The position numbers and the translations under genes are program-made. Under the pieces are notes generated by a model. The model ran no database searches. It worked only from the letters and a program-made list of their open reading frames with translations, and was not told the origin of the DNA. Below are positions 1 to 29,818 of a DNA stretch of 64,000 nt, piece after piece (the stretch's first letter is position 1; the number at the start of each line of letters is the position of its first letter). Location of the stretch: IMG/VR virus record IMGVR_UViG_3300046323_000587, positions 124,001-188,000 of that record. One strand, 5' to 3'.

Positions 1-3000
1 TGATTTTAAATCATTCATTTGTTTTTCTAGAAGTTGTTTTTCATCAATAGATAGATTAGACTTAGAAGTTTGTATTAAATAGTTTAAAAATCCAGAACCA
101 TTTTGTTCTTGATGAAGTTCTTGTAATTTAGCTACTTTTGCTTCATCGGATAAATCTTTAAATCTTGGATCTTTTATTGCTTCTAAATAAGAAAGCATTG
201 CCTCTATGTGAGATGTTGAAGTAATATCAAAAGATAAATAAGTATAACAAAGTTTACGAGCAAGAGAATTAAAGTGTTTTTGTTGAGAAGTTCTATTTTT
301 CTCTCTTAAAGCAACTAAAGAAGTCAATCCTTCTATATTAGGTTTTACAGTAGGTACATAGTTAGTAGGTTTATCTGCGTAAGTATTAGGGTTAAGAATA
401 AATTCAAAAGTATTCTTCTTCAATGCTTCAGCCATTTTTAAATAGAAGAATATATCTATATTAACAAGAGCTGTTTCATCTTTATCTAAATCTTTATTTT
501 GTTTTACTTTATCAGTTGATTTTTGTAATACTCCGTCAATTAAACTTACATAACGATAAGAATCTGACTCTGTAAAGAATAGATTATTAGCTAGAACTGA
601 ATTAAATATAGAATTAGCTAAACCTAAACTACTTAATTTAGTATTTGTTGCTTTTGTTACAGCTAAATCTTGTGTAAAAGATAATGCTAATGCAAAATTA
701 ATGCTTGTAGGCACATTTGAATCTTTAACATTTCTTGTTACTGTACTTGTTTTACTAACATCAATAATAGAAGTATCTTCATTTGTTAGTAAATCGTTTA
801 GTCTTATACCAATAAAATTAGAATAAGTTTCTCCATTTTTAGTTAAACGAACTAATCTATTGTTATTATTCTTTTTATTAATTTCTATAAAAGGTTTAAT
901 ACTATCAATAACAGTATTTTGGTCTTGAATTCTTTTTAATAACAAACTTGCTATTTTATATTGTAAATGAAAAATACTTCTATGTTTTTTATCTTCAAAG
1001 TTTGTAGAATCTTCTCTATAATCTAAATTTTCATCTCCATAAATTTCTATAATATAGCTTCTTAATAATTTTGGATTGTTTTTTAATTTTTCTATTCTAT
1101 TGCCTGGAACATAAGTAGCTAGTTGATTTATGCATTTATCATAGTCTTTTTTATTAAAATTCTCCCAAATAGTGTTTTTATTACTAGAAAGAGTTTCTAA
1201 TAAATTAGTATAATACTCTTTATTTTTTTCTATTAATTGGTCTATATTAAGTTTATTGCTTGTACGAGGATTTTTAAATTTTAAATCTCCAATTAACTTA
1301 TTTGCAAAACGTTCTCTTAGATTTTTAATATAACCTTGACCTTTATATTTATCTTCTATTACAATTGAAGCAGATGCACTTCCAGTAAGTTTTACCGCTA
1401 CATAAGAGATATTACTAGCAGTTTTAAAATCAATTAACATTGGAATCAATAGTTGTTCAGATTCACCCGTTTCTAATAAAGCTCTATACATTGAAATAGA
1501 GTTATTACTTACATCTAATGAAAAATATTTATCATAAAGAGCTTTTAATAAATTAAATTGAGTTTCTTGTAAGTTTAAACTATTATTCTCTAAAACAGAT
1601 TTTATATTTTGTCTGAATATTTCTATATCTCCAATAGAAGTTAAAGGTTTCAATCCTGCTACTTCATAATCTATCTCCATTTGTTGAAAAGCCTCTTTTC
1701 TTAATAACTCACTGTTTTTATTTAATAGCAATTCAGCTTTATTTTTAGCTTCTCCAAATATGTTAGCAATCTCTCTAAAAGTAAGATAAGATTCTCCTGT
1801 TGAGATATTAGACAACATTAATTGACCAATAGAAGAGAATTTATGGTGTTCAACATTATCTTCATTTGAATAGTTATCTTTAATTGTAAGACTTTTATCT
1901 GAATGTACTTCTCCTTTACCATTAATAGAAACTATTCTATCAAAAGTTGCATTTACTAACCCTGTAAAATTATTATGAATAACTTTCAATAGATTTTCTA
2001 GTGGTGGATTGTTTTCATCAATAACAAGTACAGTAGTTGAATCACTTGGTAAACTTTCTACTGGATTATCGTCATTATGTTTATTTACAAATGCTTTAAT
2101 ACCTAAGTACAATCTTTTTATTCTATCCTCAACTGATTCTGTATTATAATAAGTGACCACACCTTTAACACCCCCTGCACTTAAAGGATTAGCTTTTTCT
2201 GGATCAAAAAATAATCTAGCTCCAATTAAATCTTGTAATAGTACAGTAGCTTGATTAAATAATGTTGTATCTAAATCTGTTTTCTTAGCTGTATCAGCAG
2301 GAATAGCAAAATCTTTTAAATCCTCTGGTGTAACTTGACTTTCTGCAGCCAATAAATCTTCTTTAGTTTTAGCTAAACCAGAATAATTTACTCTACTTAC
2401 AGTTGATAAAATAGGTTCAGAACTTTGATCTGGATTATCAGAATAAGGTGATTGTGTAACTATTTTTGTTGGTTTAGTGTCAGTATCTAAAAATAAATTT
2501 GTATGTCTAGTTAATTCTATTCTTTCATTTTTAACAATTCCAGAAACATAATGTTTGCCAGATTCGTATTCTATTTTAATAGGATTTAGTGTAGTTTTAG
2601 AATATTTAATAGCTTTTTTAGAATATGTTTTACCGATTGTAGTAAATTCAGTTACTGTATCTGTAACATCTAATTTATTTACTTCTTTTATAAGTTTTAT
2701 TTCTGAATTAATTTTAGATTGAATAACAGGATTTAATTGTTTTTCTATATTTGCTACATTAAATTGAAGCTTTTTAAATTGTTCTTTATTTTGATACTTT
2801 TTAATAGAAGTTTCTTTAAAAAATCTTAGTGCGTTATAGAAATCAACTTGAATGTTTCTTTGAACTTCTTCTACTTCATTTAAAGTCATTGTACTTAAAT
2901 CACTATAATCAAAACTATTAAATGAATTTAAAATTTCTTTTTCTAATAAAAGAAAAGTATCTGATTCTAATTTAGAACCAGATAAACCTTCTTTAATTTT

Positions 3001-3090
3001 TTTATTTATTTCTGAATATATTTTATCAATAAATATATTAGCATTTGCTTTATTAAATTGTTCTATTTTTTGATTTTTACAATCTGCCAT
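1..3090 (-). CDS. Giant virion (ejected cargo) protein, N-terminal part only; runs off left edge; candidate virion RNA polymerase or partner subunit
   Basis: Not in ORF track because it has no stop in the window. ATG at 3090 (MADCKNQKIEQFNKANA...), frame open wherever I checked down to position 1. Starts 1 nt after the 3833-aa ORF, matching the tandem giant-cargo arrangement of crAss-like phages. No DxDxD RNAP motif seen in this fragment. Confidence 0.7.
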   Translation of the reverse strand, partial: MADCKNQKIEQFNKANANIFIDKIYSEINKKIKEGLSGSKLESDTFLLLEKEILNSFNSFDYSDLSTMTLNEVEEVQRNIQVDFYNALRFFKETSIKKYQNKEQFKKLQFNVANIEKQLNPVIQSKINSEIKLIKEVNKLDVTDTVTEFTTIGKTYSKKAIKYSKTTLNPIKIEYESGKHYVSGIVKNERIELTRHTNLFLDTDTKPTKIVTQSPYSDNPDQSSEPILSTVSRVNYSGLAKTKEDLLAAESQVTPEDLKDFAIPADTAKKTDLDTTLFNQATVLLQDLIGARLFFDPEKANPLSAGGVKGVVTYYNTESVEDRIKRLYLGIKAFVNKHNDDNPVESLPSDSTTVLVIDENNPPLENLLKVIHNNFTGLVNATFDRIVSINGKGEVHSDKSLTIKDNYSNEDNVEHHKFSSIGQLMLSNISTGESYLTFREIANIFGEAKNKAELLLNKNSELLRKEAFQQMEIDYEVAGLKPLTSIGDIEIFRQNIKSVLENNSLNLQETQFNLLKALYDKYFSLDVSNNSISMYRALLETGESEQLLIPMLIDFKTASNISYVAVKLTGSASASIVIEDKYKGQGYIKNLRERFANKLIGDLKFKNPRTSNKLNIDQLIEKNKEYYTNLLETLSSNKNTIWENFNKKDYDKCINQLATYVPGNRIEKLKNNPKLLRSYIIEIYGDENLDYREDSTNFEDKKHRSIFHLQYKIASLLLKRIQDQNTVIDSIKPFIEINKKNNNNRLVRLTKNGETYSNFIGIRLNDLLTNEDTSIIDVSKTSTVTRNVKDSNVPTSINFALALSFTQDLAVTKATNTKLSSLGLANSIFNSVLANNLFFTESDSYRYVSLIDGVLQKSTDKVKQNKDLDKDETALVNIDIFFYLKMAEALKKNTFEFILNPNTYADKPTNYVPTVKPNIEGLTSLVALREKNRTSQQKHFNSLARKLCYTYLSFDITSTSHIEAMLSYLEAIKDPRFKDLSDEAKVAKLQELHQEQNGSGFLNYLIQTSKSNLSIDEKQLLEKQMNDLKS

Positions 3091-3091
3091 T

Positions 3092-6000
3092 TTATTTACA
3101 ACTTATGTTAGTATTATTATAAATTTTTTGAAAAGATATATTTAAATTCTCGAAATCTTCATCAATTAAATTTCTTAGAAAAAAAGATCTAGCATCTGAT
3201 AAATCACCTAAAGTAGGTTTACTTATTCCTTCATACGCAGCTGATAAACCATTTTCTACTTGATTATTAATTTTATCTAGAAACTCAAATAATGGATATT
3301 CTTCTTTTAATAATCTTTTATTTATATCATCAAAATTAGTTTCTCCATAAATCATTCTAACTGCATCAGAATTAGTGTCTTTTAATTGAGCCATAGCTAT
3401 ATTAAATTGAGACCAATTGCCATTTAAAATAGCTGATTGTGCATCACTAGGTTTTTCAATTAAAGAATTTGCTTTACTTACTTCTTGAATAAAACTATAA
3501 TAAAATTTAGAAAAATCTTGTTTAGGTGTAGTTGGTGTAGATTCTATAATTTCTGTTTCTTGTACAATAGGTAATTCTTTTTTTAATATACTATCTATTG
3601 TATTAGATAAAACTAATTTATATCTTTTTTCATCTTTTTCTATTTCAGTTTGATAAGTATACAATCGATTAGTAGAATCATATATTACAGAATCTGGAAT
3701 AAAATCTAAGTTATAACCTTTATCTAATCTAGCTTTAAATAGTTCATTTGCTCCTTCTCTTATATTAAGAACTATAAATTCTTTACCTTTCAATTTAAAA
3801 AAGATTTCTTTTGCTTCATTTTTTAATGTTTTTCCATCAAGTAAATTTGTAATATCTGAATTAGTAGGTATTCCTAAAACATTATCAGCATAACCTTTTC
3901 TAATTATAGCAATCTTTTCTTGCTTTTCTTTTTCTACTGTATCTTCACTTTCTTTTATTTTCATATCTTGTTTTAATTTACTAACATCTTCCAAAGATAA
4001 GTCAAAAAATCCATAATCTGGACCTTCTTTAAACGTAATATGTGAAGTATCTGTTAATATTCCATAATGTGGCCCTGGCTGTGTACTATCAACAAGTTTA
4101 GTTAGATTCTTTCCTGGTGTGATACCAAAGATACCATTTTTAAATTGTTCTGTTCCTATTAAAGCTGTATGTAATGAACTAAGTAAAGACTTATCTAAAT
4201 CCACTAATTCTTTTATCTTAAAGAAGTTTGAATATAAATTTTGTTTTCCAGCTGCATTTAATTGTAAAAAGTGGTAGGCAGATAAAATTAATCTTACATC
4301 CATAGGATTGATGTTCCTTCCATCACCTTCTAGTTTTTTTATTAATGTTTCTAATTTTTTTTCTAGATTGTCTTTTAAAGTTTCTGCGGAAGGTTCCGAA
4401 TCAAAAAAATCAGCAAAAGGGTTTGACATTCCTTGTTGATAATCATCAATATCTTCTTGAGAAGTATTTTTACTTTCTCCTAAATACTCTCCAATAGCTT
4501 TTAGTATATCAGTTTCAGTTATATTTTCAGGGTCTGTAGTGCTTACTAATTCTAAATTGTATTTAAAATCAAGCTTTTTCCCTAAAAATTTAGTAAGAAT
4601 TTGTTTAAATCCTTTTGATAAATTTTCTTTTAGATTTGGTGTAATAATTAAATCAACTTTTACTCCAAAATCTTTTTTATTTGTAGGGTCTTCTGTTACA
4701 ATTGCTTGAAAGTTGTCATAAATTGTATTAAATGTAGTTTTTCCTTCGTCAGCATAAATTACTGTAATACCTTTATAACCAGCAAAGAATTTTTTAATAA
4801 GGTCTGCTTTATCAGTAACTGTGACAGGTTTTCCACTTGATTCAATAACTTGATTCCCTAATGTAGTTAAAATAAAAGGTCTACCAGTTTTTAAATCAAA
4901 ATTTTGTCCTTTTTTAGATAATCTATCTCTTACATCTTTAGAAGTTTCAGGTTTATCATACCAAACATAAGCACCACTAATTAAAAATTCAGTTCTTTCT
5001 TGTAATTGTTTTAAAGTTGTAGCTTCATTTTCTTTTCTAGTAAATCGACCATTTTTAATTTTTAAAGTTTCTTTTAATTCTGCAACATCTTTCTTTGAAA
5101 TTGTACCTATTACTACTTCATTATCAGATTCTGAAACTTTTTTACCAAAATTATTAGTTGTATCAAAAAATTGATTTTTAATTTCATTTGTTACGTATTC
5201 TCCGTATTTATTATTGTTATAAATACCCCCTAACGAAATTTCTAAATCTTCAACAACAACTCTCCATTCGTAAGTGATATTACCTTCATCTAAATCATTT
5301 AATTCAGTTGAACGTGAATTTACAGAAGCATCAGTTGAAGGATTAAACTTTTTACCAACTAATTTAACTGTAAATGGTTTGCGTACAATAGAATCTATTA
5401 AAATTTTTAATTTTCGTTTTACTTTAAAAGTATCTGGAAAAGCTTTTACTTTCTCTTGTAATGCTCCTACATCAATTTTTCCTGTATAATAGTTTTTTAA
5501 AGATTGAATAAAAGAAATTATCCTCTGTTGTTCTGAATCATTTAATTTATCAGTTATTTCAAGAAATTGTTTTAATCTAGTTACATCAGATAAAGGAATA
5601 TGCCAAATATAAAATCTTGCTGCATTGTATAGCTTAGAGTCATTGTCTAAATTAACTAAATTTCCATTTAAATTATCTTCAAGTAAATCATTTTCTATTT
5701 TCTTTAAATCTTCTCCGGGAATTGGTATAATAGTAATAGTTTGTTTTGGTAATTTTTCGGTTACAGATTTGAATACAACTACTTTATAATATGTTCCTGT
5801 TTTAATGATGCCGTGTGTATTTGATGTAAAACTTTTTAAAAGATTATCCACTGATTCTTTATATCCTTTATCCTCTAGATTAGGTGTAGCAAGCTTTTGT
5901 TTGTCTACATTAGGTATCTGAGTAACTGTTTTACCATCAATTGTAAATTGAATTACTTTATCAACTATTTTATCTTTGTAACGGTTTTTTAAAAATTCTT

Positions 6001-9000
6001 TATCTTCTTTATTTAAATTTAAATCAGAGGCATCAGCATAAGTTTTAGCTTGTTCTATTTTAATAATAATTTTAGGCGTTAATTTGATTTCAAAATCAGC
6101 TTTAGTTAAAGTAGGAAATATTTCTTTTAGTTGAGCTATTCTAAGAGGGTCTAATTGAGCTTCAAGCTCCTTTGTTAGATTCTTATATTCTATATTATTT
6201 AGTGTTCCTTTTAATTTACTTTGTTTTAAAGTTTCTAGTTTCTCTACAATATCTTTTATAGGATTGTTTGTACTTAATATAGACCAAAGATAAGATTCTT
6301 TAAGTTTATTGTATAGTAACTCTATTGTAGTAGTATCTGTACCTTCTGCAAACAATTCATTAAGGTTTAGATTTTCTTTATTGCTTATTACCGCTTTTTT
6401 AAAATCCGCTTTTATTTTTTCAGTAATTTCTTGAGGTGTTTTATCAGAACCTTCATCTTCTTTTATAGGATCTTTTTTTGATTCTTCTTCTACTACATTT
6501 TTATAATAATCTCTAATAAATTCCTCTGCATTAGCTTTATCTAAAATACTTGGTATAGAATAATACTCTCTTTGTTCTTGTTTAGAAAAATCAGTGTTAG
6601 CTAAATCTGGTGTAGTAGTCAAGTCATTACTTTGAAATACAATCTTATCAGTTGCTTTTAAAAGCATAGTATATAAAGGTCTCGATGTAGATAGAGTAAG
6701 ATCATCTTTATTTAAAGCAATGTAAGCGTTTCTATAAGATTTACTTTGAGCTTTTTGTAAAGTAGTTACATAACCTAAATCAATTTGATTGAATCTAGCT
6801 TTAATGCTGCTGTGATAATCTGAAATTGATTTTGATTCTAGTAGATTTTTTAACTCATTTCTTCCATTGCTATCTAAAAAAGGTATTGTTATTGTTCTAC
6901 CTCCCTGTTCTAATGTTACTGTATAACCTGTAAATTTTTTACTATCTAATTTAATCTCCTTTCTATCTTTAAAAAATTCCAGATCTCCCTCTAAAATACC
7001 GTCACTTATTTTATCTACTGTAAAAAAAGTTCCAAGTTTTATAATTTCTGTATATTGTCTATCGATATATTGTTTAATACTTGTTGTAGTAACAATCAAA
7101 TCACCTTTTTCTAATTCTTTTTTTCTACCTAATTTTGTTCTTACTCTTTTATTAAGTTCTTCAGCTCTTTTAATTGTACTTGTAATAATTCTAGTAGAAG
7201 TTAGATTAGCCTTAAAATCTTTTATAAAAGTTTCTAAAAAGACCTCTTCTTCTTTTATAACAGCTACACCTGAGTTAGTTTCTGAATCAAAATTAGACTC
7301 TATTTTTTTAGTTTTAGTGTCTGTTTCAAATATTCTACTTAAATTGTTGTAATCGGCTAGTTTAATTATTTTTGTTTTAAATTCATCAATTCTAACTTCT
7401 TTATTCTTAAAGACTTTACTTTTTTCAGGTTCTGGAATATCTATTGTATCCTTATCGTATAATAAAATAAATTTTCTTCCAGGTTCTATTAAGTTACCTA
7501 TATCGGAATTACTTATATATTCTGATTCAACTATAACTATATAATCATATTTCTTATCTATTGGTCTAGGTACACCTTCTTTTATAACTTTTTTTCCATT
7601 TTCATCTAAATATTCACTAAAAGAAGTAGTAATAGTCATACTTCCAGATATGTCAGCTTTTGTATATAATTCTAAACCAGCATTATTAGGTGATAAATAT
7701 AAAATATTAGAACTTAATTCAGATATTTTCTTCAATATATCAGTTTTATCAGTTTTTGAAGACACATCAACTCTAACAGAGCGAGTAGAATTGGCTATTT
7801 CTTCTATTGCAGCTAAATTAAAGTTTTCTTCTTCATCAGCTTTAACTTTACGTCCTAATTCTGTTGAAGTAAAAGATACTTCTTCTTTAACAAAACCAAG
7901 TAAATCTGTATTTATGTCATAATCAGTTGGTTCTTCTTCTAAAGATTCTTGAGTTTGTATTATTATATCTAAATCATCTGTTGAAAATTCTTTTTTTACA
8001 GGCTTATTTGTAATACTAGATTTAATTTCAGCTTCTTTTTTAGTTGTAGCAGCAGGTTTAGGTTTGTTGCTAGTTTTAACTTTAGTTGATTTACTTGCAC
8101 CAGAATCAGATGTAGGTTCTTTTCTTACTTCAACATTTTCGACACCTTCAACAGGAACTAACCTAACTTTTAATTCTTCTACTTGTTTCTTATAATTAGC
8201 TTTTGCTTTTGATTTAACCTCTTCATTAGATAAAAAAGTAACTTGATACCCACCTAATTCTTTATTTGGTGTCTTTTCTTCTGCTTCTTGTAATCCTAAA
8301 TGTTTTAGAATGTTTTTGTGCTTATTTCTAACAACAATATTAACTCTACGTTTACCTCTTGAAACTGCTGTGATTAGTTTTGTGAGAATATCTAGATGAT
8401 AAAGTTTTTGATCAAAATTTGTACCAATAAATTTATCGTTTACTATTTCATCTTTTGTTGATTTATTATAAGCTTCTTTTATATTATCATAAATAGAAAC
8501 AATATCTAAAAATACAACTTCTTTTTCACTTCCTTGTGCTTGAGAATTTGTATAAGTTAAAATATCGTCTACAACTTCTTCTCCAATTACCATTATTTCA
8601 GATGTATCTATTTCTTTACCTATTCTTTTAAAAGGTTTTATAGCTACATTAGATTCTTTAGCTTTTTCAAACAATTCTTTTTCTTTTGTAGCAGCTTCTT
8701 TATATTTCTCTTTTTCTCCATTAACAAATTGTCCGAATCCATCATCAGCAATAACAGATACTTTAATACCAGAATAATCTTCATCATTATAAGAAATTTT
8801 ATCTTTAAGATTCAAAGAACCTAATATAGCTATTATATCAATAGAAGCATTATCAAATCTAGAATCTAAGGTAGTTATATTATTTTCTAATGCTTTTAAT
8901 CCTATGTTTAAAGTAGCTAAAAAATCAATATTAGCTTTATATCCAATTCTTAAAGAATCTGTCAGAGGTAAAGTTCTAGTAATAAAAGGAATTGAAGTAA

Positions 9001-12000
9001 TGCTGTTATTAGTATATACAGGATATTTATCTGGTTCAGAAGTGTGTGAGATATTTTGAATTTGTTTAGAATCTCCTGTATAAAATATAGGCAATCTATT
9101 CTCAAGATTAGCTGCATTTTGTAACTCTTCTAAAAAATAAATTACATTTTTAGGTATGTTAGTTGCTTCATCATAAAATATTGAATTATAAGTTTCAGCA
9201 AACACTTTAAATTTTTCAATATTACCATCTTTTAAAAATACCTTATAATCTGTTGTTTCTCCATTAATTAAATCAAAAGCTTCTTTTTCAGTTAATCCAA
9301 ATTGTTGTAATAAAGCATTTAAAATACCAAAAGGTTTGTTTACTAAGTTCTCAAATTTTGCTATGCCTAAGTCTCCTAGTTTATCAACTTTATCAACTTT
9401 ATCTTTTAAGTCAAATGTTGATAACATTGAATCAAAATTGCCTTGTTGTATAATATTATTAGATAACAATAAAGTTTTTTTAGTTGAATTTTTATTTATT
9501 AAAGTAAGTAAATATGACATAATCATAGAAGTCTTACCTGTACCGAAAGTACCATCAATAAATATTTGGTTTTTAATAGGGTTGTAAATATCTAAATAAG
9601 CTAATATTTCTTGTTTGTATACTTCCTTATCTTTACCTAATAATACTTCTTTTAATGTTAGATCTGTTACATCTTTATCACTTGTTTTACTATAATAAGT
9701 GCTTTTTTCAAAATCTATTTTATCTCCATTAAAAAAAAGATTTATATTTGAACTTAATCCAAATTGTCTAACTAAAGATTGAAATTCTGGTTCAATTAAT
9801 ATGTCTTCTGTTAAGTCTTTATCAAAATATTCTTTTAATTTAAGAACTTTTGAAGCTAGTATATCAAATTGTTTATTATCTTTTGCTAAATAAAACTTAT
9901 ATGCTTCTAAGATTACTTTTTCTTGTATTCCAATAGGCGCATTTACATTTTCTTTTTCTAAAAGAATAGAAATAGTTTCAAAATATAGTTTTCTGGAATT
10001 ATTAGAAGGAAAATTTAATACTTCAGAAATATAGTGGTACTTAGCAGCTAAATTATATTTTTGTTCTTCTAATAAGTCTTCTGAAATTGTAAATTCACTA
10101 GAACTTTTAAATATACCTGTTGTATTTTCTCTTAATGAACTTAAATTTTGAGAAGTTGTTACACTATTATAAATACCTGATTTTGTAGCAAGATTGTCAC
10201 CAGGATTAATTTTTATTACTTTATTTACACTTGTAGTATATAAATCTACGTGACCGTTATCTTTTAATTCAACTCCTCTTTCTAAAGCTTCTCGTTCATT
10301 GTTTTGATAGTTTATTAAAGCTTCATCAATCAATTCTTTTACTTCTTTTTCTTGTGTTTGATACCAAGAATATAAAGCAGTTTCAAGTTCACTTAAATAA
10401 ACAATATCTTCTACAATAGTTTCTGAACTAATTTTATCAAATTCTTTATCTGGACTGTATTTATCACCTAGTTGGTTTTGTATTTCAGAATCAATACCGG
10501 AAATTAAATTTATTGTAGAGTGTAATACAGCTGTATCTTTTTTTACTACTGTGATAGATTTTTTAATGAATAAATTATCTTTATTATTTTCATTAAAGTT
10601 TTTTCTTTCAGTTAAAAATTTTACAACTCTTTCATTATTTTCTAATATAATTCTAGTTTTTAAATATTCTTTATCAAATGCAGTAAAGAATTGTTGTTCT
10701 TTAGAATCTTTTTGAATTTCTTTTAGTTTAGAATCATAAGAACCATTTAATTCAACTTCTTTTTTAATTCCATTAATAAATAATAATAATTTATTAGAAT
10801 TTTCTAAAAGATTTATAATATTATTAATTTCAGCAACAGAGTATAATTTTAAAGTTCCTTTATCTGAATTTTGAAATGCAGCAACATTATTTGAATCTAT
10901 TTTTTGAAGTATTTCAAATTCTTTTTCTAGTTCTTGTGTGATATCAGTATATTGACTTGCTACTTCACCTGATAAACTTAATCCTTTATCAATTAAAAGA
11001 GTTTGAAGATTTTCAAAGTTTTTTGCTAATTGATTATATTTAGACAATAGATTTTCACTAAGAGTTTTGTTTAACTCAGGAACATCATTTTTATAACTTC
11101 TAATTAATTCTTGTTGTAAAGGTTCTTTTTTAAATTCATTCAAATAAGGATTTTCAGAATCTCTTTTCCATACATTAACCATAGGAATAATAAATTCCAT
11201 AGCAGACATTAAAGCTCTTTGTTTATCTATTGTAGATTGAAGTTTACTTAATTCTGTAGTAACATTAACAGTTTCAGAAGTCAATCCAAATTCTTCAATA
11301 TCGGAATTAAATTGTTTAATGATTTTATTTCCAGTTGAACCAGCATTATTTAATGAATTATCGTTATCAAAATAAAATTTAGAAAAATCAACTTCTGGCT
11401 CTATTTCAATATGTTCTAATAAAGTTTCTTTAAAAAGGTTTTTAAAATCAGTATCTTCAGTTTCATCATCAGAATAAATATTTTCATTTAAGCTTTTAAT
11501 AATATCCGTAAATTTTTTATTTGATATTTTTGTACCTGCTTTTATAACAGTTGAATCAATAAATTCTTTAATAAAAGATTTTTGAAATACTTTATCTTTA
11601 AATGAATCAGTAAATTTATTTACTGAATAAATATTTCCATAATCATCTTCATCTTCTGTTTCAATTACATAATTTGTGTATAGTTCATTTCTTAATTTAT
11701 TATCTAACAGACTCACTTTTTTATCATTCTCCAACACATCTCTACTAACATCATAATTCTTAATAGGATTCAATGAAGCTTCTTTATATTTCTTAAATGC
11801 TAATTTAGCCTTAGTAATCTCTTCTTTACTACTCTCAAACTTACTTGCATCTATCTTACTTCCGTCTTCTGTAAAGTGTCTATGAATATCTGGATTTATA
11901 TTAAATAAAGCTTGATGTAAATAATCTGTAGCTAATTTACCTGTTTCTATATCTCGTTTTTTTCTCAAAACAGCATCAATGGCTTCTTTATTTGCACCAG

Positions 12001-14593
12001 AATCAATAGAACCCTCAGTTCCATCATTACTTGCTAAACCCATTAATTTAGTATGTAATTCAGCTAAATCAGATTTAAAAGTTGTGTAATCAGGAGAAAT
12101 AAAACTATGAAAATGTTCTTTAAATGCTTTTTGAGCAGACTCTACAATATTTTTAGGTACTCCTTGTGTTTCGTATCTATTTTTTAAAGCAACTGAATCA
12201 TTATCAATTTCTTTAATTTGATTAGCAAGACTGTCTAATTGTTTTTTAGTTTCTTCAGCTGTTGTCGGTTCAGTTTCAGATTGTTTTTTATAATCTTTCT
12301 GTAAGTCAAAATATTGTTTAGTCAAACCATTTTTCTTTTCAAATAATTCAGTTTGTTGTTTTGAATATTCTCTTTGAACAAATTGATTTTCAATGCTAGA
12401 TTTAGCAGAAGACATAGTTTTAAACCAATTTCTCATTTCTTTTGCAATCATAGCAGCTTGAGAATCTTCATATTTTCCAGCTTTCTTAAAGATAACTTGT
12501 TTATTATCTTTATCTAATTTTTCAACATCAAAAGAAAGATTTTTATCAAATAATTTACCTTCACGAGCTTCACTATCAACATAATCCATAAAATCATCTT
12601 GTGCTTTTGAATCACCTAAATAATCTACTAATTGTGTTTTAGCATTTTGAGGAAGAGCTTTCCAATCAAATAATCTTTTAGCCATTACACCTCCAGCAGC
12701 ACCAGCAACCATAGACATACCTAATTCTTGCATAAAATGTGTTGGATCTGTATCAAATTTTTTATATGGAAGTTCTTTACCTTTCTCGTCTTTTTGTTTG
12801 TCTTTATATAATGTAGGCAAACCTAAATCAACTAAAGCATTATATCCCATTTTAAATACTTGAGGAATAACTGCTTCTGCACCTTCTTCTAATGCTTCAC
12901 TTAATCCAGAAGCAGTTAAATCAAGAGTTCTAAGTTTTACATTATCATAACCTTTTGTAGCACGATTAGTAACTTTATCATAAATATCAACAAATGGTTT
13001 AGTTACTTTTTTACCCATTTCTTCAACTGTATTAGAACCTACTTTAGCTGATTTCACTCTATCAGTAAATAGACTTCCAATTTTATTAGCAAACCAAGAT
13101 TTCTGTTGAATTGTTTGTCCAGTTTTCAACGCACCTTCTCCAACTACTTCTTTTACAACATCTTTCATAATAGCAGATTGTGCATCCAACCCCATATTTT
13201 TAATAACATCTTGTGCTATATCACTTTTATATAATTTTTTCAAAGCCCAACCAGTTAAAGCAGTAAATGCTACAGCTTCTCCGTCAGATAATTCAGAAGA
13301 TTTTGCAGCTTTATGAGCTTCAGACATACCTAATCCAACATTATATACCTGAGAAAATGTTTTAGCGGTATTAGAAATATTTTTAATTTCTAATGGAGTC
13401 ATTGGAGCATTAGTAAGCCCTCCTTTTAATCCAGATAATAAAGATTTTTCAATTCCTTTGTAATAAATAGGAATAGATGAAATTAATTTCTGTTGACCTA
13501 ATTGTAAATAAACATCTCCTAATAAATTTAACGCATTTTCAACTGTAAATAGTTGTTCTTGTGAATTTCTTGACACACTTGTATTCAATGAAGAAGAACG
13601 ATTTTGAAAATAGTTTAATTTACTATTCATTGACTTATACCAATCTTCTTCTGTATATCCTTTAGATTTAGCTTTTTTTCCATTGATTGCCCAATCATTG
13701 ACATCATCATAAGTTGATTTGACAGATGACACAGCTTCTAATCCCATTTTACCTAATTCAGGAGTTGAATCAAACAAAGATTTAGCTACACCTAAACCAA
13801 AATATACTTGACCAACATAAGGAATAAATGTAGGTGCAATCATTGTAGCAGTTTTAGCAATAGAACCTAGTAAAGATTTATTTTTACCAATTCCAGACAT
13901 ATAAGTATCACCAAGAACACCTGTATCAAATGCAGAAACAAATTCTTTATTTCGTCCTTCTTTATCATCAATATAATAAGTATAAAAGTCTCCATTCTCA
14001 TTAATTTTATAAGAACCATCTTTTTCTTTTGCATAGACTTTAGGATTTAACCAAGTTTCAATGAATCCTTGGTCTTTAACTTTATCTTTGGTTAATTGTT
14101 TTTTACCTGTTGGATCAAATACATAATTATCTATTGCTAGTTTACGTTCATCTTCAGTTCCTTTTGACCATTGATTGATACCTATAAAGCCTTTATTTTT
14201 ACCTAGTTTGACATTAGCTTTATCTTGTTTAGATAAATTCATTAAAACAGTAGGATTTTTAAGAGTTTGAATACGATTCATTTTATTGAAATGAGTTTCA
14301 AATCCTTTAAAACCACCTGTATCAAAAGGATCAAAATCCATTTTAGAGAATTTATTGTATTCTTTTAAATGCTGGTCATAATAATCATCAAATTTCTTAT
14401 CATCAAAAGTTGTATCGTCTTTACTCTTATGAAATGCTGTAATTTGTTTTATTTTATCTAACTTTTTATATTCTGCTTTATCTTTTAAATCAAAATCACT
14501 TGGACGAAGATTATTTTGAAATAAATCTCCTAAACGTTGTGGTTTTTCACCTGTTATAGATGATAATAACCAATCTGGTTTTTGTTCTTCCAT
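3092..14593 (-). CDS. Giant virion cargo protein (3833 aa) with N-terminal membrane-like helices, an SF1 helicase domain and a second degenerate RecD/Dda-like domain
   Basis: Walker A IDGTFGTGKT (~9530-9560), Walker B FYDEAT (~9165), motif III YTGDSKQ (~9070), motif V SQAQGSE (~8530), motif VI TAVSRGK (~8360). Hydrophobic Gly/Ala-rich segments at ~13770-13880 and ~12680-12725. Position downstream of muzzle/cargo genes as in Crassvirales. Confidence 0.8.
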   Translation of the reverse strand: MEEQKPDWLLSSITGEKPQRLGDLFQNNLRPSDFDLKDKAEYKKLDKIKQITAFHKSKDDTTFDDKKFDDYYDQHLKEYNKFSKMDFDPFDTGGFKGFETHFNKMNRIQTLKNPTVLMNLSKQDKANVKLGKNKGFIGINQWSKGTEDERKLAIDNYVFDPTGKKQLTKDKVKDQGFIETWLNPKVYAKEKDGSYKINENGDFYTYYIDDKEGRNKEFVSAFDTGVLGDTYMSGIGKNKSLLGSIAKTATMIAPTFIPYVGQVYFGLGVAKSLFDSTPELGKMGLEAVSSVKSTYDDVNDWAINGKKAKSKGYTEEDWYKSMNSKLNYFQNRSSSLNTSVSRNSQEQLFTVENALNLLGDVYLQLGQQKLISSIPIYYKGIEKSLLSGLKGGLTNAPMTPLEIKNISNTAKTFSQVYNVGLGMSEAHKAAKSSELSDGEAVAFTALTGWALKKLYKSDIAQDVIKNMGLDAQSAIMKDVVKEVVGEGALKTGQTIQQKSWFANKIGSLFTDRVKSAKVGSNTVEEMGKKVTKPFVDIYDKVTNRATKGYDNVKLRTLDLTASGLSEALEEGAEAVIPQVFKMGYNALVDLGLPTLYKDKQKDEKGKELPYKKFDTDPTHFMQELGMSMVAGAAGGVMAKRLFDWKALPQNAKTQLVDYLGDSKAQDDFMDYVDSEAREGKLFDKNLSFDVEKLDKDNKQVIFKKAGKYEDSQAAMIAKEMRNWFKTMSSAKSSIENQFVQREYSKQQTELFEKKNGLTKQYFDLQKDYKKQSETEPTTAEETKKQLDSLANQIKEIDNDSVALKNRYETQGVPKNIVESAQKAFKEHFHSFISPDYTTFKSDLAELHTKLMGLASNDGTEGSIDSGANKEAIDAVLRKKRDIETGKLATDYLHQALFNINPDIHRHFTEDGSKIDASKFESSKEEITKAKLAFKKYKEASLNPIKNYDVSRDVLENDKKVSLLDNKLRNELYTNYVIETEDEDDYGNIYSVNKFTDSFKDKVFQKSFIKEFIDSTVIKAGTKISNKKFTDIIKSLNENIYSDDETEDTDFKNLFKETLLEHIEIEPEVDFSKFYFDNDNSLNNAGSTGNKIIKQFNSDIEEFGLTSETVNVTTELSKLQSTIDKQRALMSAMEFIIPMVNVWKRDSENPYLNEFKKEPLQQELIRSYKNDVPELNKTLSENLLSKYNQLAKNFENLQTLLIDKGLSLSGEVASQYTDITQELEKEFEILQKIDSNNVAAFQNSDKGTLKLYSVAEINNIINLLENSNKLLLFINGIKKEVELNGSYDSKLKEIQKDSKEQQFFTAFDKEYLKTRIILENNERVVKFLTERKNFNENNKDNLFIKKSITVVKKDTAVLHSTINLISGIDSEIQNQLGDKYSPDKEFDKISSETIVEDIVYLSELETALYSWYQTQEKEVKELIDEALINYQNNEREALERGVELKDNGHVDLYTTSVNKVIKINPGDNLATKSGIYNSVTTSQNLSSLRENTTGIFKSSSEFTISEDLLEEQKYNLAAKYHYISEVLNFPSNNSRKLYFETISILLEKENVNAPIGIQEKVILEAYKFYLAKDNKQFDILASKVLKLKEYFDKDLTEDILIEPEFQSLVRQFGLSSNINLFFNGDKIDFEKSTYYSKTSDKDVTDLTLKEVLLGKDKEVYKQEILAYLDIYNPIKNQIFIDGTFGTGKTSMIMSYLLTLINKNSTKKTLLLSNNIIQQGNFDSMLSTFDLKDKVDKVDKLGDLGIAKFENLVNKPFGILNALLQQFGLTEKEAFDLINGETTDYKVFLKDGNIEKFKVFAETYNSIFYDEATNIPKNVIYFLEELQNAANLENRLPIFYTGDSKQIQNISHTSEPDKYPVYTNNSITSIPFITRTLPLTDSLRIGYKANIDFLATLNIGLKALENNITTLDSRFDNASIDIIAILGSLNLKDKISYNDEDYSGIKVSVIADDGFGQFVNGEKEKYKEAATKEKELFEKAKESNVAIKPFKRIGKEIDTSEIMVIGEEVVDDILTYTNSQAQGSEKEVVFLDIVSIYDNIKEAYNKSTKDEIVNDKFIGTNFDQKLYHLDILTKLITAVSRGKRRVNIVVRNKHKNILKHLGLQEAEEKTPNKELGGYQVTFLSNEEVKSKAKANYKKQVEELKVRLVPVEGVENVEVRKEPTSDSGASKSTKVKTSNKPKPAATTKKEAEIKSSITNKPVKKEFSTDDLDIIIQTQESLEEEPTDYDINTDLLGFVKEEVSFTSTELGRKVKADEEENFNLAAIEEIANSTRSVRVDVSSKTDKTDILKKISELSSNILYLSPNNAGLELYTKADISGSMTITTSFSEYLDENGKKVIKEGVPRPIDKKYDYIVIVESEYISNSDIGNLIEPGRKFILLYDKDTIDIPEPEKSKVFKNKEVRIDEFKTKIIKLADYNNLSRIFETDTKTKKIESNFDSETNSGVAVIKEEEVFLETFIKDFKANLTSTRIITSTIKRAEELNKRVRTKLGRKKELEKGDLIVTTTSIKQYIDRQYTEIIKLGTFFTVDKISDGILEGDLEFFKDRKEIKLDSKKFTGYTVTLEQGGRTITIPFLDSNGRNELKNLLESKSISDYHSSIKARFNQIDLGYVTTLQKAQSKSYRNAYIALNKDDLTLSTSRPLYTMLLKATDKIVFQSNDLTTTPDLANTDFSKQEQREYYSIPSILDKANAEEFIRDYYKNVVEEESKKDPIKEDEGSDKTPQEITEKIKADFKKAVISNKENLNLNELFAEGTDTTTIELLYNKLKESYLWSILSTNNPIKDIVEKLETLKQSKLKGTLNNIEYKNLTKELEAQLDPLRIAQLKEIFPTLTKADFEIKLTPKIIIKIEQAKTYADASDLNLNKEDKEFLKNRYKDKIVDKVIQFTIDGKTVTQIPNVDKQKLATPNLEDKGYKESVDNLLKSFTSNTHGIIKTGTYYKVVVFKSVTEKLPKQTITIIPIPGEDLKKIENDLLEDNLNGNLVNLDNDSKLYNAARFYIWHIPLSDVTRLKQFLEITDKLNDSEQQRIISFIQSLKNYYTGKIDVGALQEKVKAFPDTFKVKRKLKILIDSIVRKPFTVKLVGKKFNPSTDASVNSRSTELNDLDEGNITYEWRVVVEDLEISLGGIYNNNKYGEYVTNEIKNQFFDTTNNFGKKVSESDNEVVIGTISKKDVAELKETLKIKNGRFTRKENEATTLKQLQERTEFLISGAYVWYDKPETSKDVRDRLSKKGQNFDLKTGRPFILTTLGNQVIESSGKPVTVTDKADLIKKFFAGYKGITVIYADEGKTTFNTIYDNFQAIVTEDPTNKKDFGVKVDLIITPNLKENLSKGFKQILTKFLGKKLDFKYNLELVSTTDPENITETDILKAIGEYLGESKNTSQEDIDDYQQGMSNPFADFFDSEPSAETLKDNLEKKLETLIKKLEGDGRNINPMDVRLILSAYHFLQLNAAGKQNLYSNFFKIKELVDLDKSLLSSLHTALIGTEQFKNGIFGITPGKNLTKLVDSTQPGPHYGILTDTSHITFKEGPDYGFFDLSLEDVSKLKQDMKIKESEDTVEKEKQEKIAIIRKGYADNVLGIPTNSDITNLLDGKTLKNEAKEIFFKLKGKEFIVLNIREGANELFKARLDKGYNLDFIPDSVIYDSTNRLYTYQTEIEKDEKRYKLVLSNTIDSILKKELPIVQETEIIESTPTTPKQDFSKFYYSFIQEVSKANSLIEKPSDAQSAILNGNWSQFNIAMAQLKDTNSDAVRMIYGETNFDDINKRLLKEEYPLFEFLDKINNQVENGLSAAYEGISKPTLGDLSDARSFFLRNLIDEDFENLNISFQKIYNNTNISCK

Positions 14594-28929: not shown

Positions 28930-29818
28930 TTATAAAATCATTTAATAAAAATTTATTATTGTTTGCAATCATTTCCCAAATAGGTAAATTTTCTATTCGA
29001 TCCATTTCAAGATATTCTTTTTGCAATTCTACATCTACTCTATAATATTTTAAACCTTGTTTTTTATACAAATTAAGTGAATAATCTACTACATCACTTC
29101 CAGCTTTCATAAAACTTTCAATAAGAGGGAATTTACTTTTGTGTATCAACCAATCTAACATACCCCAATCTTCATTATTTACATTTAAGTTAGCTTCCGC
29201 AGAATATCCTGTTCCTAATGATAACACAACTATATTAGAAATATTAATTCCTTTACTAATAGCTTCATTTACAGCTATTTGAGCAGGATTATTTGAAACA
29301 ATTCCTCCATCTATATAAGAATCTTTATCAATTATCCAAGGATTAAAATAGGTAGGAGCAGCAGTAGAAGAACAAATTGCTTCTAAATAAGAGGTAGTAG
29401 AATCTTTATAGGATTTAAATAATTTAACTTTATTTTTAGTAAAATTAAAACTAGTCATAATAAAATCAAATGTACTTTCGGATAATTTTTTATCTATTGG
29501 AATATACTTAGCTAAGGAATTATACAGATTCATATTATCATATTTAGCTCTAATTGCAGAAAATATAAATCTAAATTTTTTTTTGAAAATATTTTTAGCT
29601 TCTTGTTTATATAGTTCTATAATATCTTTCGAAGAATATTTTAACGACAACATTGCAGTTATAATAGAACCAGTAGAAGAACTTGCATATAAATTAAACT
29701 TAGTTGTATCAAAACCAACAGAATCTAAGTGGTCTAACATAACAGCGGGAATAATTCCTTTTAAGCCTCCACCATCAATAGACAATATATAATATTTCTT
29801 ATCAATCATATTTAACAT
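28916..29818 (-). CDS. Patatin-like phospholipase
   Basis: ILSIDGGGLKG oxyanion loop, SSSTG nucleophile elbow (GxSxG variant), SSTAAPTYF, catalytic IDGG + NNP, VLSLGTG. Confidence 0.92.
   Translation of the reverse strand: MLNMIDKKYYILSIDGGGLKGIIPAVMLDHLDSVGFDTTKFNLYASSSTGSIITAMLSLKYSSKDIIELYKQEAKNIFKKKFRFIFSAIRAKYDNMNLYNSLAKYIPIDKKLSESTFDFIMTSFNFTKNKVKLFKSYKDSTTSYLEAICSSTAAPTYFNPWIIDKDSYIDGGIVSNNPAQIAVNEAISKGINISNIVVLSLGTGYSAEANLNVNNEDWGMLDWLIHKSKFPLIESFMKAGSDVVDYSLNLYKKQGLKYYRVDVELQKEYLEMDRIENLPIWEMIANNNKFLLNDFINDNK

What the first reader, a model, noticed from the sequence alone, without database searches (positions are those of the whole stretch)
6630..9570. Tandem SF1 helicase plus pseudo-helicase inside a giant ejected protein
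Seen: domain 1 (~8330-9570) has all SF1 motifs. A second RecD/Dda-like domain (~6630-7790) keeps motif spacing but each catalytic motif is altered: Walker A SSKTDKT, Ia YLSPNN, Walker B IVIVESEYI, III ILLYDKDTI, IV IITSTIKRAEELNKRVR, V GYVTTLQKAQSKSY, VI LYTMLLKA. Inference: a membrane-anchored translocase that may pull DNA in during ejection, with a dead copy acting as an ssDNA-binding or structural module.
Basis: partly seen in the sequence, partly recalled or inferred. Interest (0 to 1): 0.6.

Follow-up and report, generated by a model that had tools for sequence, protein, structure and literature searches.

The report
Helicase plus dead helicase, phage giant-protein
A 3,833-residue protein of a 226-kb freshwater crAss-like phage, encoded next to the likely virion RNA polymerase, carries one intact SF1 helicase module and then a T4 Dda-like helicase module that keeps its fold but has lost its ATP-handling residues; this is an unusual variant of known kinds, not a new kind of system.

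Summary
The ORF at window 3092-14593 (-) encodes 3,833 aa, and every quoted motif is present once at the stated place.

Domain 2 (aa 2255-2670) is a true Dda/RecD-like SF1B module:
- Its only foreign relatives among 1.84 billion representatives are AAA_30+UvrD_C_2 helicases.
- It matches PHROG 'Dda-like helicase' at E 5e-12.
- The AF2 model (pLDDT 79.5) matches T4 Dda at Foldseek E 1.5e-22 and Z 27.
- It keeps only 17 of 53 highly conserved family columns. All P-loop glycines, the Walker B Asp, the motif III G and Q, the motif V H and G, and the motif VI Arg are replaced.

Domain 1 (aa 1650-2105) is not a copy of domain 2. It belongs to a very divergent SF1 family found only through related phages, in three other giant ORFs. 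All NTPase motifs are invariant in that family, and hhalign against the Dda family gives 97.5%. Its fold could not be modelled.

'Ejected' rests on position only: the next gene carries the DYDID RNA polymerase-type motif. 'Membrane-anchored' is not supported.

My best guess is a co-delivered helicase that opens phage DNA, with the dead module acting as an ssDNA clamp or wedge as in TraI. The function is unproven.

The parts
3092..14593 (-). Giant ORF P0001, 3,833 aa, uninterrupted under table 11
   Evidence: Identical over 21.5 kb in the IMG/VR contig of the same sample series.
12407..14029 (-). N-terminal conserved module, aa 189-729. Glycine-rich and moderately hydrophobic (aa 251-269 and 624-642), with no clear transmembrane helix.
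   Evidence: BLASTP E 3e-16 to aa 203-698 of a 2,967-aa ORF of human-gut phage MT835470.1. Kyte-Doolittle maxima are 1.24 and 1.10.
8279..9646 (-). Domain 1, aa 1650-2105: SF1 helicase module with intact Walker A, Walker B (DEA), III (GD..Q), IV (R), V (QG.E) and VI (SR)
   Evidence: Motif positions. Family alignment with invariant motifs. hhalign against the Dda family 97.5%, E 6.4e-12. Language-model neighbours are all SF1 helicases. The single-sequence AF2 run failed, pLDDT 34.
9527..9553 (-). Domain 1 Walker A (aa 1681-1689)
   Evidence: It is the only G....GK[ST] in the protein.
9155..9181 (-). Domain 1 Walker B, DEA (aa 1805-1813)
8333..8548 (-). Domain 1 motifs V (aa 2016-2030) and VI (aa 2074-2087)
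7832..8278 (-). Linker, aa 2106-2254: K/S/T/P-rich low-complexity stretch followed by an acidic stretch. Probably flexible.
   Evidence: Sequence itself. No family match.
6584..7831 (-). Domain 2, aa 2255-2670: Dda/RecD2-like SF1B fold with ablated NTPase motifs (pseudo-helicase)
7739..7765 (-). Domain 2 degenerate Walker A (aa 2277-2285). All three conserved glycines are replaced (Val, Lys, Asp); Lys2283 and Thr2284 are kept.
7514..7540 (-). Domain 2 degenerate Walker B (aa 2352-2360). The family's DE reads VE: Val2355, Glu2356.
6638..6775 (-). Domain 2 degenerate motifs V (His to Gln, Gly-Ser-Thr to Ser-Lys-Ser) and VI (Arg to Lys2646)
1..3090 (-). First 1,030 codons of the next gene, a 3,655-aa ORF that runs off the window. 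It carries DYDID at aa 2203 and is the candidate crAss-type virion RNA polymerase.
   Evidence: It is 35.5% identical (E 4e-26) around the motif to a 3,706-aa ORF with DYDID that follows the domain-1 homologue in phage G002.

Best explanation
P0001 is the giant protein encoded last in the structural/cargo operon, directly before the DYDID (virion RNA polymerase-type) giant gene, in a 226-kb, 25% G+C freshwater crAss-like phage.

Shown here:
- It contains an SF1 helicase/translocase module (aa 1650-2105) whose NTPase motifs are invariant across four very divergent phage lineages.
- About 150 mostly low-complexity residues follow.
- Then comes a module (aa 2255-2670) homologous to T4 Dda/RecD2-type SF1B helicases. 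It is predicted to keep the Dda-like SF1B two-RecA-domain fold (376 of 416 residues superpose on T4 Dda) but has lost the residues needed to bind and hydrolyse NTP.

Inferred:
- Like the giant RNA polymerase-associated proteins of crAss001 and phi14:2, it is packaged in the capsid and delivered with the DNA.
- Inside the cell, the active module uses ATP to track on phage DNA and open it. This could help the co-delivered polymerase, which in phi14:2 transcribes single-stranded but not double-stranded DNA in vitro.

The dead module is a lineage-specific addition taken from the pool of Dda-like helicases of polyvalent proteins. It is not a duplicate of domain 1.
For: Phage identity:
- Crass_capsid and CrAss_Ring_2 families match.
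- The genome is 226,480 bp and CheckV estimates 95% completeness.

Domain 2:
- Its only foreign hits in 1.84e9 representatives are three AAA_30+UvrD_C_2 helicases.
- The alignment to the best hit is colinear, E 4e-17.
- It matches phrog_325 at E 4.9e-12.
- AF2 gives pLDDT 79.5 and pTM 0.78.
- Foldseek matches T4 Dda 3upu at E 1.5e-22, TM 0.70.
- VIA gives Z 27.1 over 376 aligned residues, RecD2 Z 25.1, and the TraI active helicase domain (residues 970-1451) Z 20.2.
- It keeps 17 of 53 conserved columns against 36-53 (median 51) in 72 relatives.
- Its terminal branch is 8.4 against a median of 0.37.

Domain 1:
- Homologues lie in P0140 (E 1.3e-4), P0141 (E 8e-17 to P0140) and the MT835470.1 ORF (E 1e-3, plus the N-terminal module at E 3e-16).
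- The motifs are invariant across these lineages.
- hhalign gives 97.5%, E 6.4e-12.
- Family members hit SLFN-g3_helicase at 5e-6 and AAA_30 at 6e-6.
- All ten atlas neighbours are SF1 helicases, score 0.93-0.95.
- A strain about 5% divergent (X4) changes 30 codons, none of them in a motif.

Context:
- The next ORF has DYDID, and this arrangement is conserved in G002.
- phi14:2 has the same order: giant protein, then the DFDID polymerase, then a zincin protein, all virion proteins by MS/MS.
- The crAss001 giants are virion cargo (PMC10172136).
- phi14:2 gp66 transcribes ssDNA and denatured DNA but not dsDNA (bioRxiv 10.1101/2020.03.07.982082).
- The TraI vestigial helicase domain binds ssDNA (PMC5422253).
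Against: - There are no virion proteomics, expression data or biochemistry for this phage.
- Domain 1's fold is unverified. AF2 without an alignment gave pLDDT 34, and no Pfam or PHROG family reaches its cut-off.
- The two experimentally studied crassviruses, crAss001 and phi14:2, have no Walker A and no match to the domain-1 profile in their giant virion proteins. A cargo helicase is therefore not a general requirement for crAss-type virion transcription.
- The domain-1 family was not found in four other related records, G001 and G003-G005.
- P0001 shows no detectable similarity to crAss001 gp47/49/50 or phi14:2 gp076-078.
- Domain 2 keeps Lys-Thr of the P-loop, the Walker B Glu and the motif V Gln, so residual nucleotide binding cannot be excluded.
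- The AF2 model of domain 2 was guided by an alignment of active helicases, so fold retention is partly presupposed.
Confidence: 0.5

Rival explanations
1. Anti-defence 'polyvalent protein' reading. P0001 and its neighbours are injected effectors. Their helicase modules act on the entering DNA or on host nucleoprotein complexes, for example by stripping restriction or CRISPR complexes or covering DNA ends. They would not serve transcription.
For: - The same gene block encodes typical polyvalent-protein domains. P0005 has ART-PolyVal, an intact Dda/PIF1-like helicase and a zincin HExxH motif (a second, HExxxH-spaced site was seen only by eye in the translation); a 1,446-aa protein has a 2OG-Fe(II) oxygenase domain; a 1,824-aa protein has a PD-(D/E)XK nuclease domain.
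- The closest relative of domain 2, P0002, is an ART-PolyVal+helicase fusion encoded just after a 4,525-aa ORF with DYDVD. Another relative fuses AlkB to the helicase (P0008).
- Helicase modules are a recurrent part of polyvalent proteins (PMC5512222).
- The atlas gives a weak LPD22 lead for the N-terminal module.
Against: P0001 itself has no recognised polyvalent-protein domain in Pfam. The described polyvalent helicases are mostly SF2/SNF2 fused to methylases, and SF1 is rare among them. No target is identifiable.
Confidence: 0.2
2. A membrane-anchored motor reels the genome into the cell during ejection, and the dead module is a structural part of that motor.
For: - The protein sits where crassvirus cargo proteins are encoded.
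- It has an intact NTPase motor.
- The moderately hydrophobic glycine-rich N-terminal module is conserved in a gut crAss-like phage.
- From established knowledge, enzyme-driven genome entry is known for T7 and N4.
Against: - No segment reaches a usual transmembrane hydrophobicity; the maximum is 1.24.
- From established knowledge, SF1 enzymes translocate on single strands, while the genome enters as a duplex.
- crAss001 and phi14:2 manage entry without such a module.
Confidence: 0.12
3. Domain 2 is a decaying relic with no role of its own. It would be a once-active Dda-like helicase fused into a fast-evolving giant protein and now drifting, kept only because it does no harm or serves as a spacer.
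For: - Its branch is extremely long, 8.4 against a median of 0.37.
- It has lost 36 of 53 conserved positions.
- It is absent from all related phages tested.
- Its amino-acid composition deviates from the family.
Against: - The reading frame stays open over 416 codons in a genome with about 9% GC3, where stop codons arise easily.
- The model is confidently folded; the 2A/2B half reaches pLDDT 90-96.
- Losses concentrate on NTPase residues. Motif IV Asn/Arg, motif V Thr/Lys/Gln and core aromatic residues persist.
- The sequence is identical in another sample.
Confidence: 0.13
4. P0001 is not packaged at all. It would act in the cytoplasm in replication, recombination or late transcription.
For: There is no direct evidence of packaging for this protein. 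No homology to proven virion proteins was detected.
Against: - It is co-oriented with, and contiguous to, the capsid and tail genes, and lies directly upstream of the DYDID giant gene.
- The genome already has a separate replication-arm SF1 helicase of 533 aa.
- The positional equivalents in phi14:2 and crAss001 are virion proteins.
Confidence: 0.08

Closest known systems
T4 Dda / Deinococcus RecD2 (SF1B helicases; Pfam AAA_30 + UvrD_C_2; PHROG 325)
   Same: Domain 2 is homologous by sequence. Its model superposes on Dda over 376 of 416 residues, Z 27.1. Motif order and spacing are kept.
   Different: The P-loop glycines, Walker B Asp, motif III Gly/Gln, motif V His/Gly and motif VI Arg are replaced. 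It is embedded in a 3,833-aa protein rather than standing alone. Domain 1 matches this family only over the 1A half.
F/R1 plasmid relaxase TraI: a vestigial plus an active RecD2-like helicase domain in one polypeptide that travels with the transferred DNA
   Same: One chain holds a catalytically dead and a live SF1 helicase module. The protein accompanies DNA into a new cell (inferred for P0001). In TraI the dead module binds ssDNA and may carry the strand-splitting pin (PMC5422253). The TraI active helicase domain (residues 970-1451) is a Z 20.2 structural match of domain 2.
   Different: In TraI both modules are RecD2-like with similar structures (RMSD 3.8 A), and the dead one comes first. 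Here the two modules come from different SF1 lineages, the live one comes first, and there is no relaxase domain.
RecC of RecBCD and AddB of AddAB (inactivated SF1 helicase folds used as DNA-binding scaffolds)
   Same: The principle is the same: a helicase fold that has lost ATPase motifs is retained next to an active SF1 motor (established knowledge; not tested here).
   Different: RecC and AddB are separate subunits of a repair nuclease complex that recognise Chi. No sequence or specific structural link to domain 2 was found; the RecBCD chain that matched was the active RecD.
Giant RNA polymerase-associated virion (cargo) proteins of crassviruses: crAss001 gp47/gp49/gp50 and phi14:2 gp076-gp078 (GenBank numbering)
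   Same: The genomic position is the same, at the end of the structural operon next to the DxDxD giant polymerase gene. Sizes are similar. Those proteins are in virions by mass spectrometry.
   Different: No detectable sequence similarity to P0001, and those proteins have no Walker A or helicase module. P0001's relatives with the helicase are uncultured: G002, G009 and MT835470.1.
Polyvalent proteins of phages and conjugative elements (Iyer et al. 2017)
   Same: These are multi-domain giant proteins thought to be delivered with the DNA. The neighbouring P0005 and the nearest relatives of domain 2 carry ART-PolyVal or AlkB fused to a Dda-like helicase.
   Different: P0001 itself has no recognised polyvalent-protein domain. 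The described helicases of that class are mainly SF2/SNF2-methylase dyads.

Membership tests
SF1 helicases (domain 1) | Ordered motifs I, Ia, II, III, IV, V and VI with catalytic Lys, Asp-Glu, Gln and Arg | tested here: met
   All are present in order and invariant in four lineages at about 20-26% overall identity.
SF1 helicases (domain 1) | Significant profile similarity to a recognised SF1 family | tested here: inconclusive
   hhalign of the 3-sequence profile against the Dda family gives 97.5%, E 6.4e-12, but only over Walker A to motif III. Pfam hits of P0001 itself are below cut-off. Family members reach E 5e-6 to 6e-6. PDB profile search gave nothing significant.
SF1 helicases (domain 1) | Two RecA-like domains (1A, 2A) in the structure | tested here: inconclusive
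   The single-sequence AF2 model has pLDDT 34 and is unusable. No further fold jobs were available after homologues were found.
Dda/RecD2-like SF1B helicases (domain 2) | Sequence homology to the family | tested here: met
   phmmer E 4e-7 library-wide. BLASTP E 4e-17 over 432 columns. phrog_325 E 4.9e-12. Family HMM E 1e-17 for a single target.
Dda/RecD2-like SF1B helicases (domain 2) | SF1B fold with 1A, 2A and the beta-rich 2B/tower parts | tested here: met
   AF2 pLDDT 79.5. 3upu_A Foldseek E 1.5e-22. Z 27.1, rmsd 3.7 A over 376 residues. Caveat: the model was guided by the family alignment.
Dda/RecD2-like SF1B helicases (domain 2) | Catalytic NTPase residues (P-loop GxxxxGK[ST], Walker B Asp-Glu, motif III Gln, motif VI Arg) | tested here: not met
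   Val, Lys and Asp replace the three glycines; Val replaces the Walker B Asp; Thr replaces the motif III Gln; Lys replaces the motif VI Arg. It shares the fold and ancestry but should not be filed as an active helicase.
Crassvirus virion cargo / RNA polymerase-associated giant proteins | Encoded in the giant-gene block adjoining the DxDxD polymerase gene of a crAss-like genome | tested here: met
   crAss capsid and ring families match. The next ORF has DYDID, and this is conserved in G002. The gene order is the same as in phi14:2.
Crassvirus virion cargo / RNA polymerase-associated giant proteins | Presence in purified virions and delivery into the host | not testable with these tools
   The phage is uncultured and known from freshwater metagenomes. 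No proteome exists.
Crassvirus virion cargo / RNA polymerase-associated giant proteins | Sequence homology to a proven cargo protein | tested here: not met
   There are no BLASTP or profile hits of P0001 to crAss001 gp45-50 or phi14:2 gp076-082. The only link is to uncultured phages.
TraI-type tandem vestigial + active helicase | Both modules are paralogous RecD2-like domains in one chain | tested here: not met
   Domains 1 and 2 share no detectable similarity and have different nearest relatives. This is an analogy, not membership.
Polyvalent proteins | Presence of signature domains (ART-PolyVal, LPDs, MuF, zincin and others) in the same polypeptide | tested here: not met
   None is found in P0001. 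There is only a weak LPD22 lead. The neighbouring P0005 does meet this feature.

The most novel reading that the evidence does not exclude
Some crAss-like phages package their own SF1 helicase with the virion RNA polymerase. The helicase would melt the entering duplex and hand single-stranded template to a polymerase that cannot use double-stranded DNA on its own. In this phage a recruited, catalytically dead Dda-like module serves as the strand-holding clamp or wedge of that machine. That would give a built-in solution to the template problem left open for the phi14:2 polymerase, and a phage counterpart of the QDE-1/QDE-3 pairing and of TraI's dead-plus-live helicase design.
Probability: 0.18. 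Interest if true: 0.8.

Novelty: new variant of a known kind. Interest (0 to 1): 0.5.

Why it matters
The giant cargo proteins of crassviruses are among the least understood phage proteins. The only studied virion polymerase of this group works on single-stranded but not double-stranded DNA in vitro, and what opens the template is not known.

A conserved helicase module with intact motifs, sitting in the giant protein next to the polymerase gene in several uncultured lineages (one from the human gut), gives a concrete and testable candidate.

The dead Dda-like module is a clean natural example of a helicase fold being kept after its ATPase is lost, in a protein that probably travels with DNA. 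It parallels TraI, RecC and AddB.

The domain-1 family is invisible to Pfam, to PHROGs and to an exhaustive phmmer search. It was found only through synteny in related phages. This shows how much enzymology can hide in these giant ORFs.

Tried and rejected
- **Whole-protein Pfam and PHROG scans of P0001:** nothing.
- **PDB sequence searches of both domains and of three neighbouring giants:** nothing useful.
- **tblastn of aa 1640-2700 and aa 2700-3833 against 50,697 phage records:** no match.
- **Word-index search and IMG/VR pattern scans with the helicase region:** only the phage itself.
- **Tandem duplication idea:** rejected. BLASTP of domain 1 against domain 2 gives no similarity, and the two have different relatives.
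- **Domain 2 as a recent copy of the intact helicase in neighbouring P0005:** rejected. Similarity is only weak and C-terminal, E 1e-3, far below that to P0002.
- **AF2 of domain 1 without an alignment:** failed, pLDDT 34.
- **Search for domain 2 in five related phage records:** none found.
- **Search for the domain-1 family in G001, G003, G004, G005, four 52-81 kb fragments, crAss001 and phi14:2:** none found. The fragments are incomplete, so absence there means little.
- **Transmembrane anchor:** not supported by hydropathy.
- **Sequence link of the 3,655-aa ORF to the solved phi14:2 polymerase:** not detected. Only the DYDID motif and its conservation in G002 support that assignment.
- **Complex prediction:** not used, because the report does not claim that the two modules bind each other.

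Full report
**What the window is**

All long ORFs lie on the minus strand and G+C is about 26%. Pfam recognises a crassvirus major capsid protein (window 52398-53786) and tail ring protein 2 (47107-47766). The window is bases 124001-188000 of a single 226,480-bp virus record with 25% G+C. CheckV rates it 95% complete, and it is not a concatemer. Sequencing runs that hold the stretch are freshwater metagenomes.

The genome has a plus-strand arm from about 1 to 97 kb and a minus-strand arm from about 97 to 208 kb. The minus-strand arm runs from the capsid and tail genes into a 41-kb block of six ORFs, five of them giant. In transcription order these are 3,833, 3,655, 1,446, 2,342, 478 and 1,824 aa. 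The finding lies in the first of these, P0001 (window 3092-14593, minus strand).

**Check of the observation**

Domain 1 is aa 1650-2105 (nt 8279-9646) and domain 2 is aa 2255-2670 (nt 6584-7831). Between them lie about 150 residues, first K/S/T/P-rich and then acidic. The ORF has no stop codon under table 11, and no other code was considered.

**Domain 2 is a real but catalytically dead Dda-like module**

- An exhaustive phmmer search of aa 1640-2700 against 1.84 billion cluster representatives returned only three foreign proteins, and all three matched domain 2 (best E 4e-7).
- All three are AAA_30 + UvrD_C_2 helicases of the RecD/Dda/PIF1 type. The best, P0002, also has an ART-PolyVal domain.
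- The pairwise alignment with P0002 is colinear over 432 columns (E 4e-17) and pairs each degenerate motif with its canonical counterpart.
- PHROGs independently gives 'Dda-like helicase' (phrog_325, E 4.9e-12).
- I aligned domain 2 with 72 family members (A1). Of the 53 columns conserved in at least 85% of the family, domain 2 keeps 17. The other members keep 36-53, with a median of 51.
- The losses are the three P-loop glycines (now Val, Lys, Asp; Lys2283 and Thr2284 remain), the Walker B Asp (now Val; Glu2356 remains), the motif III Gly and Gln, the motif V His and Gly-Ser-Thr, and the motif VI Arg (now Lys2646).
- The residues kept include Arg2401, motif IV Asn2481 and Arg2485, motif V Thr2611, Lys2614 and Gln2616, and Tyr2641.
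- An Asp directly before the P-loop lysine, together with the loss of every glycine, makes phosphate binding very unlikely. This is an inference from the known geometry of P-loops.
- On a maximum-likelihood tree the domain sits on a terminal branch of 8.4 substitutions per site against a median of 0.37, so its exact placement is unreliable.
- AlphaFold2 with alignment A1 gives pLDDT 79.5 and pTM 0.78. Foldseek ranks T4 Dda first (3upu_A, E 1.5e-22, TM 0.70), followed by RecD2, RecD and Pif1.
- VIA-align gives Z 27.1 (376 residues, 3.7 A) for Dda, 25.1 for RecD2 and 20.2 for TraI. The alignment of active helicases steers this model, so it shows compatibility with the fold rather than independent proof.
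- Contig pieces from another sample and study (X3) are identical across nt 6594-8119, which covers the degenerate motifs. The substitutions are therefore not assembly errors.

**Domain 1 is a different and very divergent SF1 module with intact motifs**

- It has no similarity to domain 2 or to the intact helicase of the neighbouring P0005.
- It had no foreign hit in the exhaustive search. In Pfam it gives only sub-threshold P-loop/SF1 hits: ResIII at 0.007 and Viral_helicase1 at 0.02.
- The protein-language-model search placed it among SF1 helicase clusters in all ten top rows (scores 0.93-0.95, 181-194 shared features).
- A Dda-family HMM picks up three colinear pieces: Walker A, Walker B to motif III, and motif V.
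- The decisive step was to go through relatives. Capsid homologues (35-52% identity) led to 37 other IMG/VR records, and I then searched whole records.
- Phage G002 (175 kb, terminal repeats) has a 2,723-aa ORF, P0140, whose aa 676-846 align with P0001 aa 1656-1844 (E 1.3e-4).
- Fragment G009 has a 3,411-aa ORF with a module related to P0140's (E 8e-17).
- The human-gut phage record MT835470.1 has a 2,967-aa ORF that matches P0001 twice, colinearly. The N-terminal module aligns aa 189-729 with aa 203-698 (E 3e-16). The helicase aligns aa 1656-1902 with aa 1484-1710 (E 1e-3). A syntenic gene of about 1,550 aa lies upstream.
- Across these four lineages, at about 20-26% identity, six features are invariant: the Walker A G..G.GK, DEA, GD..Q, the motif IV Arg, QG.E and the motif VI Arg.
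- The three-sequence profile matches the Dda family at 97.5% probability (E 6.4e-12) from Walker A to motif III.
- Family members hit SLFN-g3_helicase and AAA_30 at about 5e-6.
- A strain about 5% divergent (X4) changes 30 codons in the covered parts of domain 1, 21 of them non-synonymously. None falls in a motif, and most fall in the insert between motifs IV and V.
- The fold itself remains unverified, because the single-sequence AF2 run failed (pLDDT 34).

**Distribution**

Domain 2 was not found in five related records. The domain-1 family was not found in G001, G003, G004 or G005. It is also absent from the giant virion proteins of the two cultured models: crAss001 gp47/49/50 and phi14:2 gp076-078 have no Walker A and no profile match. 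The helicase is therefore an accessory module of some lineages, and the dead Dda-like module is specific to this one so far.

**Context and the 'ejected' claim**

- The next gene, 3,655 aa, has its first 1,030 codons at window 1-3090. It carries DYDID at aa 2203.
- In G002 the domain-1 homologue is likewise followed by a 3,706-aa ORF with DYDID. The region around the motif is the best conserved part, at 35.5% identity and E 4e-26.
- phi14:2 has DFDID at aa 1361 of its 2,180-aa polymerase. That gene is flanked by two giant proteins, and all three are annotated as structural by MS/MS.
- crAss001 virions contain gp47, gp49 and gp50.
- P0001 thus occupies the position of a cargo protein, but it has no detectable homology to a proven one. 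Packaging is an inference.
- Further downstream the block encodes P0005 (ART-PolyVal, an intact Dda/PIF1-like helicase and zincin-type motifs), a 2OG-Fe(II) oxygenase protein and a PD-(D/E)XK nuclease protein. This is the repertoire described for polyvalent proteins.
- P0002, the nearest relative of domain 2, is encoded right after a 4,525-aa ORF with DYDVD.
- No segment of P0001 reaches a usual transmembrane hydropathy. The maxima are 1.24 at aa 251-269 and 1.10 at aa 624-642.

**Mechanism**

Three things are shown: a live-looking SF1 motor, a linker, and a dead SF1B fold in one chain next to the polymerase-type gene. The rest is inferred.

I favour a co-delivered helicase that tracks on and opens the phage DNA. 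The phi14:2 polymerase transcribes single-stranded and denatured DNA but not duplex DNA in vitro, which leaves a need for a strand opener. [quoted passage not shown]

The absence of the module from crAss001 and phi14:2 weakens any claim of a general role. The rivals are an anti-defence role, a DNA-entry motor, a functionless relic and a non-packaged cytoplasmic enzyme.

**Verdict**

This is a new variant of known kinds (the crassvirus cargo giant, the Dda-like helicase and the live-plus-dead helicase pairing), not a new category.

Noticed in passing
whole genome G000 (window = bases 124001-188000): At 226,480 bp (CheckV 95% complete, linear, no end repeats), this freshwater crAss-like phage exceeds the 145-192 kb quoted for the largest 'zeta' crAss-like genomes. 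A relative of 244,700 bp (G001, capsid 41% identical) also exists.
   Followed up: partly
window 1-3090 (-) and genome 116123-127090 (L003:23-10990:-): This 3,655-aa ORF has DYDID at aa 2203. The region is 35.5% identical to a 3,706-aa ORF with DYDID in G002, making it the candidate crAss-type virion RNA polymerase. It is much longer than phi14:2's 2,180-aa enzyme, so it may be a fusion. No sequence link to the solved structure was detectable.
   Followed up: partly
genome 104614-111642 (L002:7217-14242:-), outside the window: P0005 (2,342 aa) has a zincin-type HExxH motif near its C-terminus (a second, HExxxH-spaced site was noted only by eye in the translation), an ART-PolyVal domain and an intact Dda/PIF1-like helicase (aa about 1245-1754). 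It is a textbook polyvalent protein inside a crAss-like giant-gene block.
   Followed up: partly
genome 111662-116002 and 97478-102952 (L002), outside the window: A 1,446-aa protein has a 2OG-Fe(II) oxygenase (AlkB-like) domain, and a 1,824-aa protein has a PD-(D/E)XK nuclease domain and an HExxH motif. Both lie in the same block.
   Followed up: no
window 55150-56805 (-): A 551-aa protein has four DUF5977 repeats (E 2e-57), lying a few genes upstream (in transcription order) of the capsid gene. Its function is unknown.
   Followed up: no
window 6500-9700: Strain variation is uneven. Run X4 carries a variant 5-10% divergent over domain 1 (21 of 30 changed codons are non-synonymous, clustered in aa 1916-1972 and 2090-2103), while its pieces over domain 2 are identical to the window. 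This could be a strain mixture or a recombination mosaic.
   Followed up: partly
window 3092-14593: Codon bias is extreme. G+C at third codon positions is only about 9% throughout the giant ORF, with no compositional break at domain 2. The Dda-like module is therefore not a recent import.
   Followed up: partly
genome 94398-95999 (+), outside the window: A separate 533-aa SF1 helicase (AAA_19 at E 3e-14, Viral_helicase1, UvrD_C_2) sits at the end of the plus-strand arm. The genome therefore encodes four SF1-type modules in all.
   Followed up: no
window 25148-26986 (-) and 28916-29818 (-): The 612-aa protein has a weak DUF192 match (E 2e-4). The 300-aa protein is almost the only protein of 19 scanned with a PHROG match (phrog_25573, unknown function, E 8e-36; one other gave a weak hit to phrog_23460, E 1e-4). 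This shows how far the phage lies from catalogued phages.
   Followed up: no
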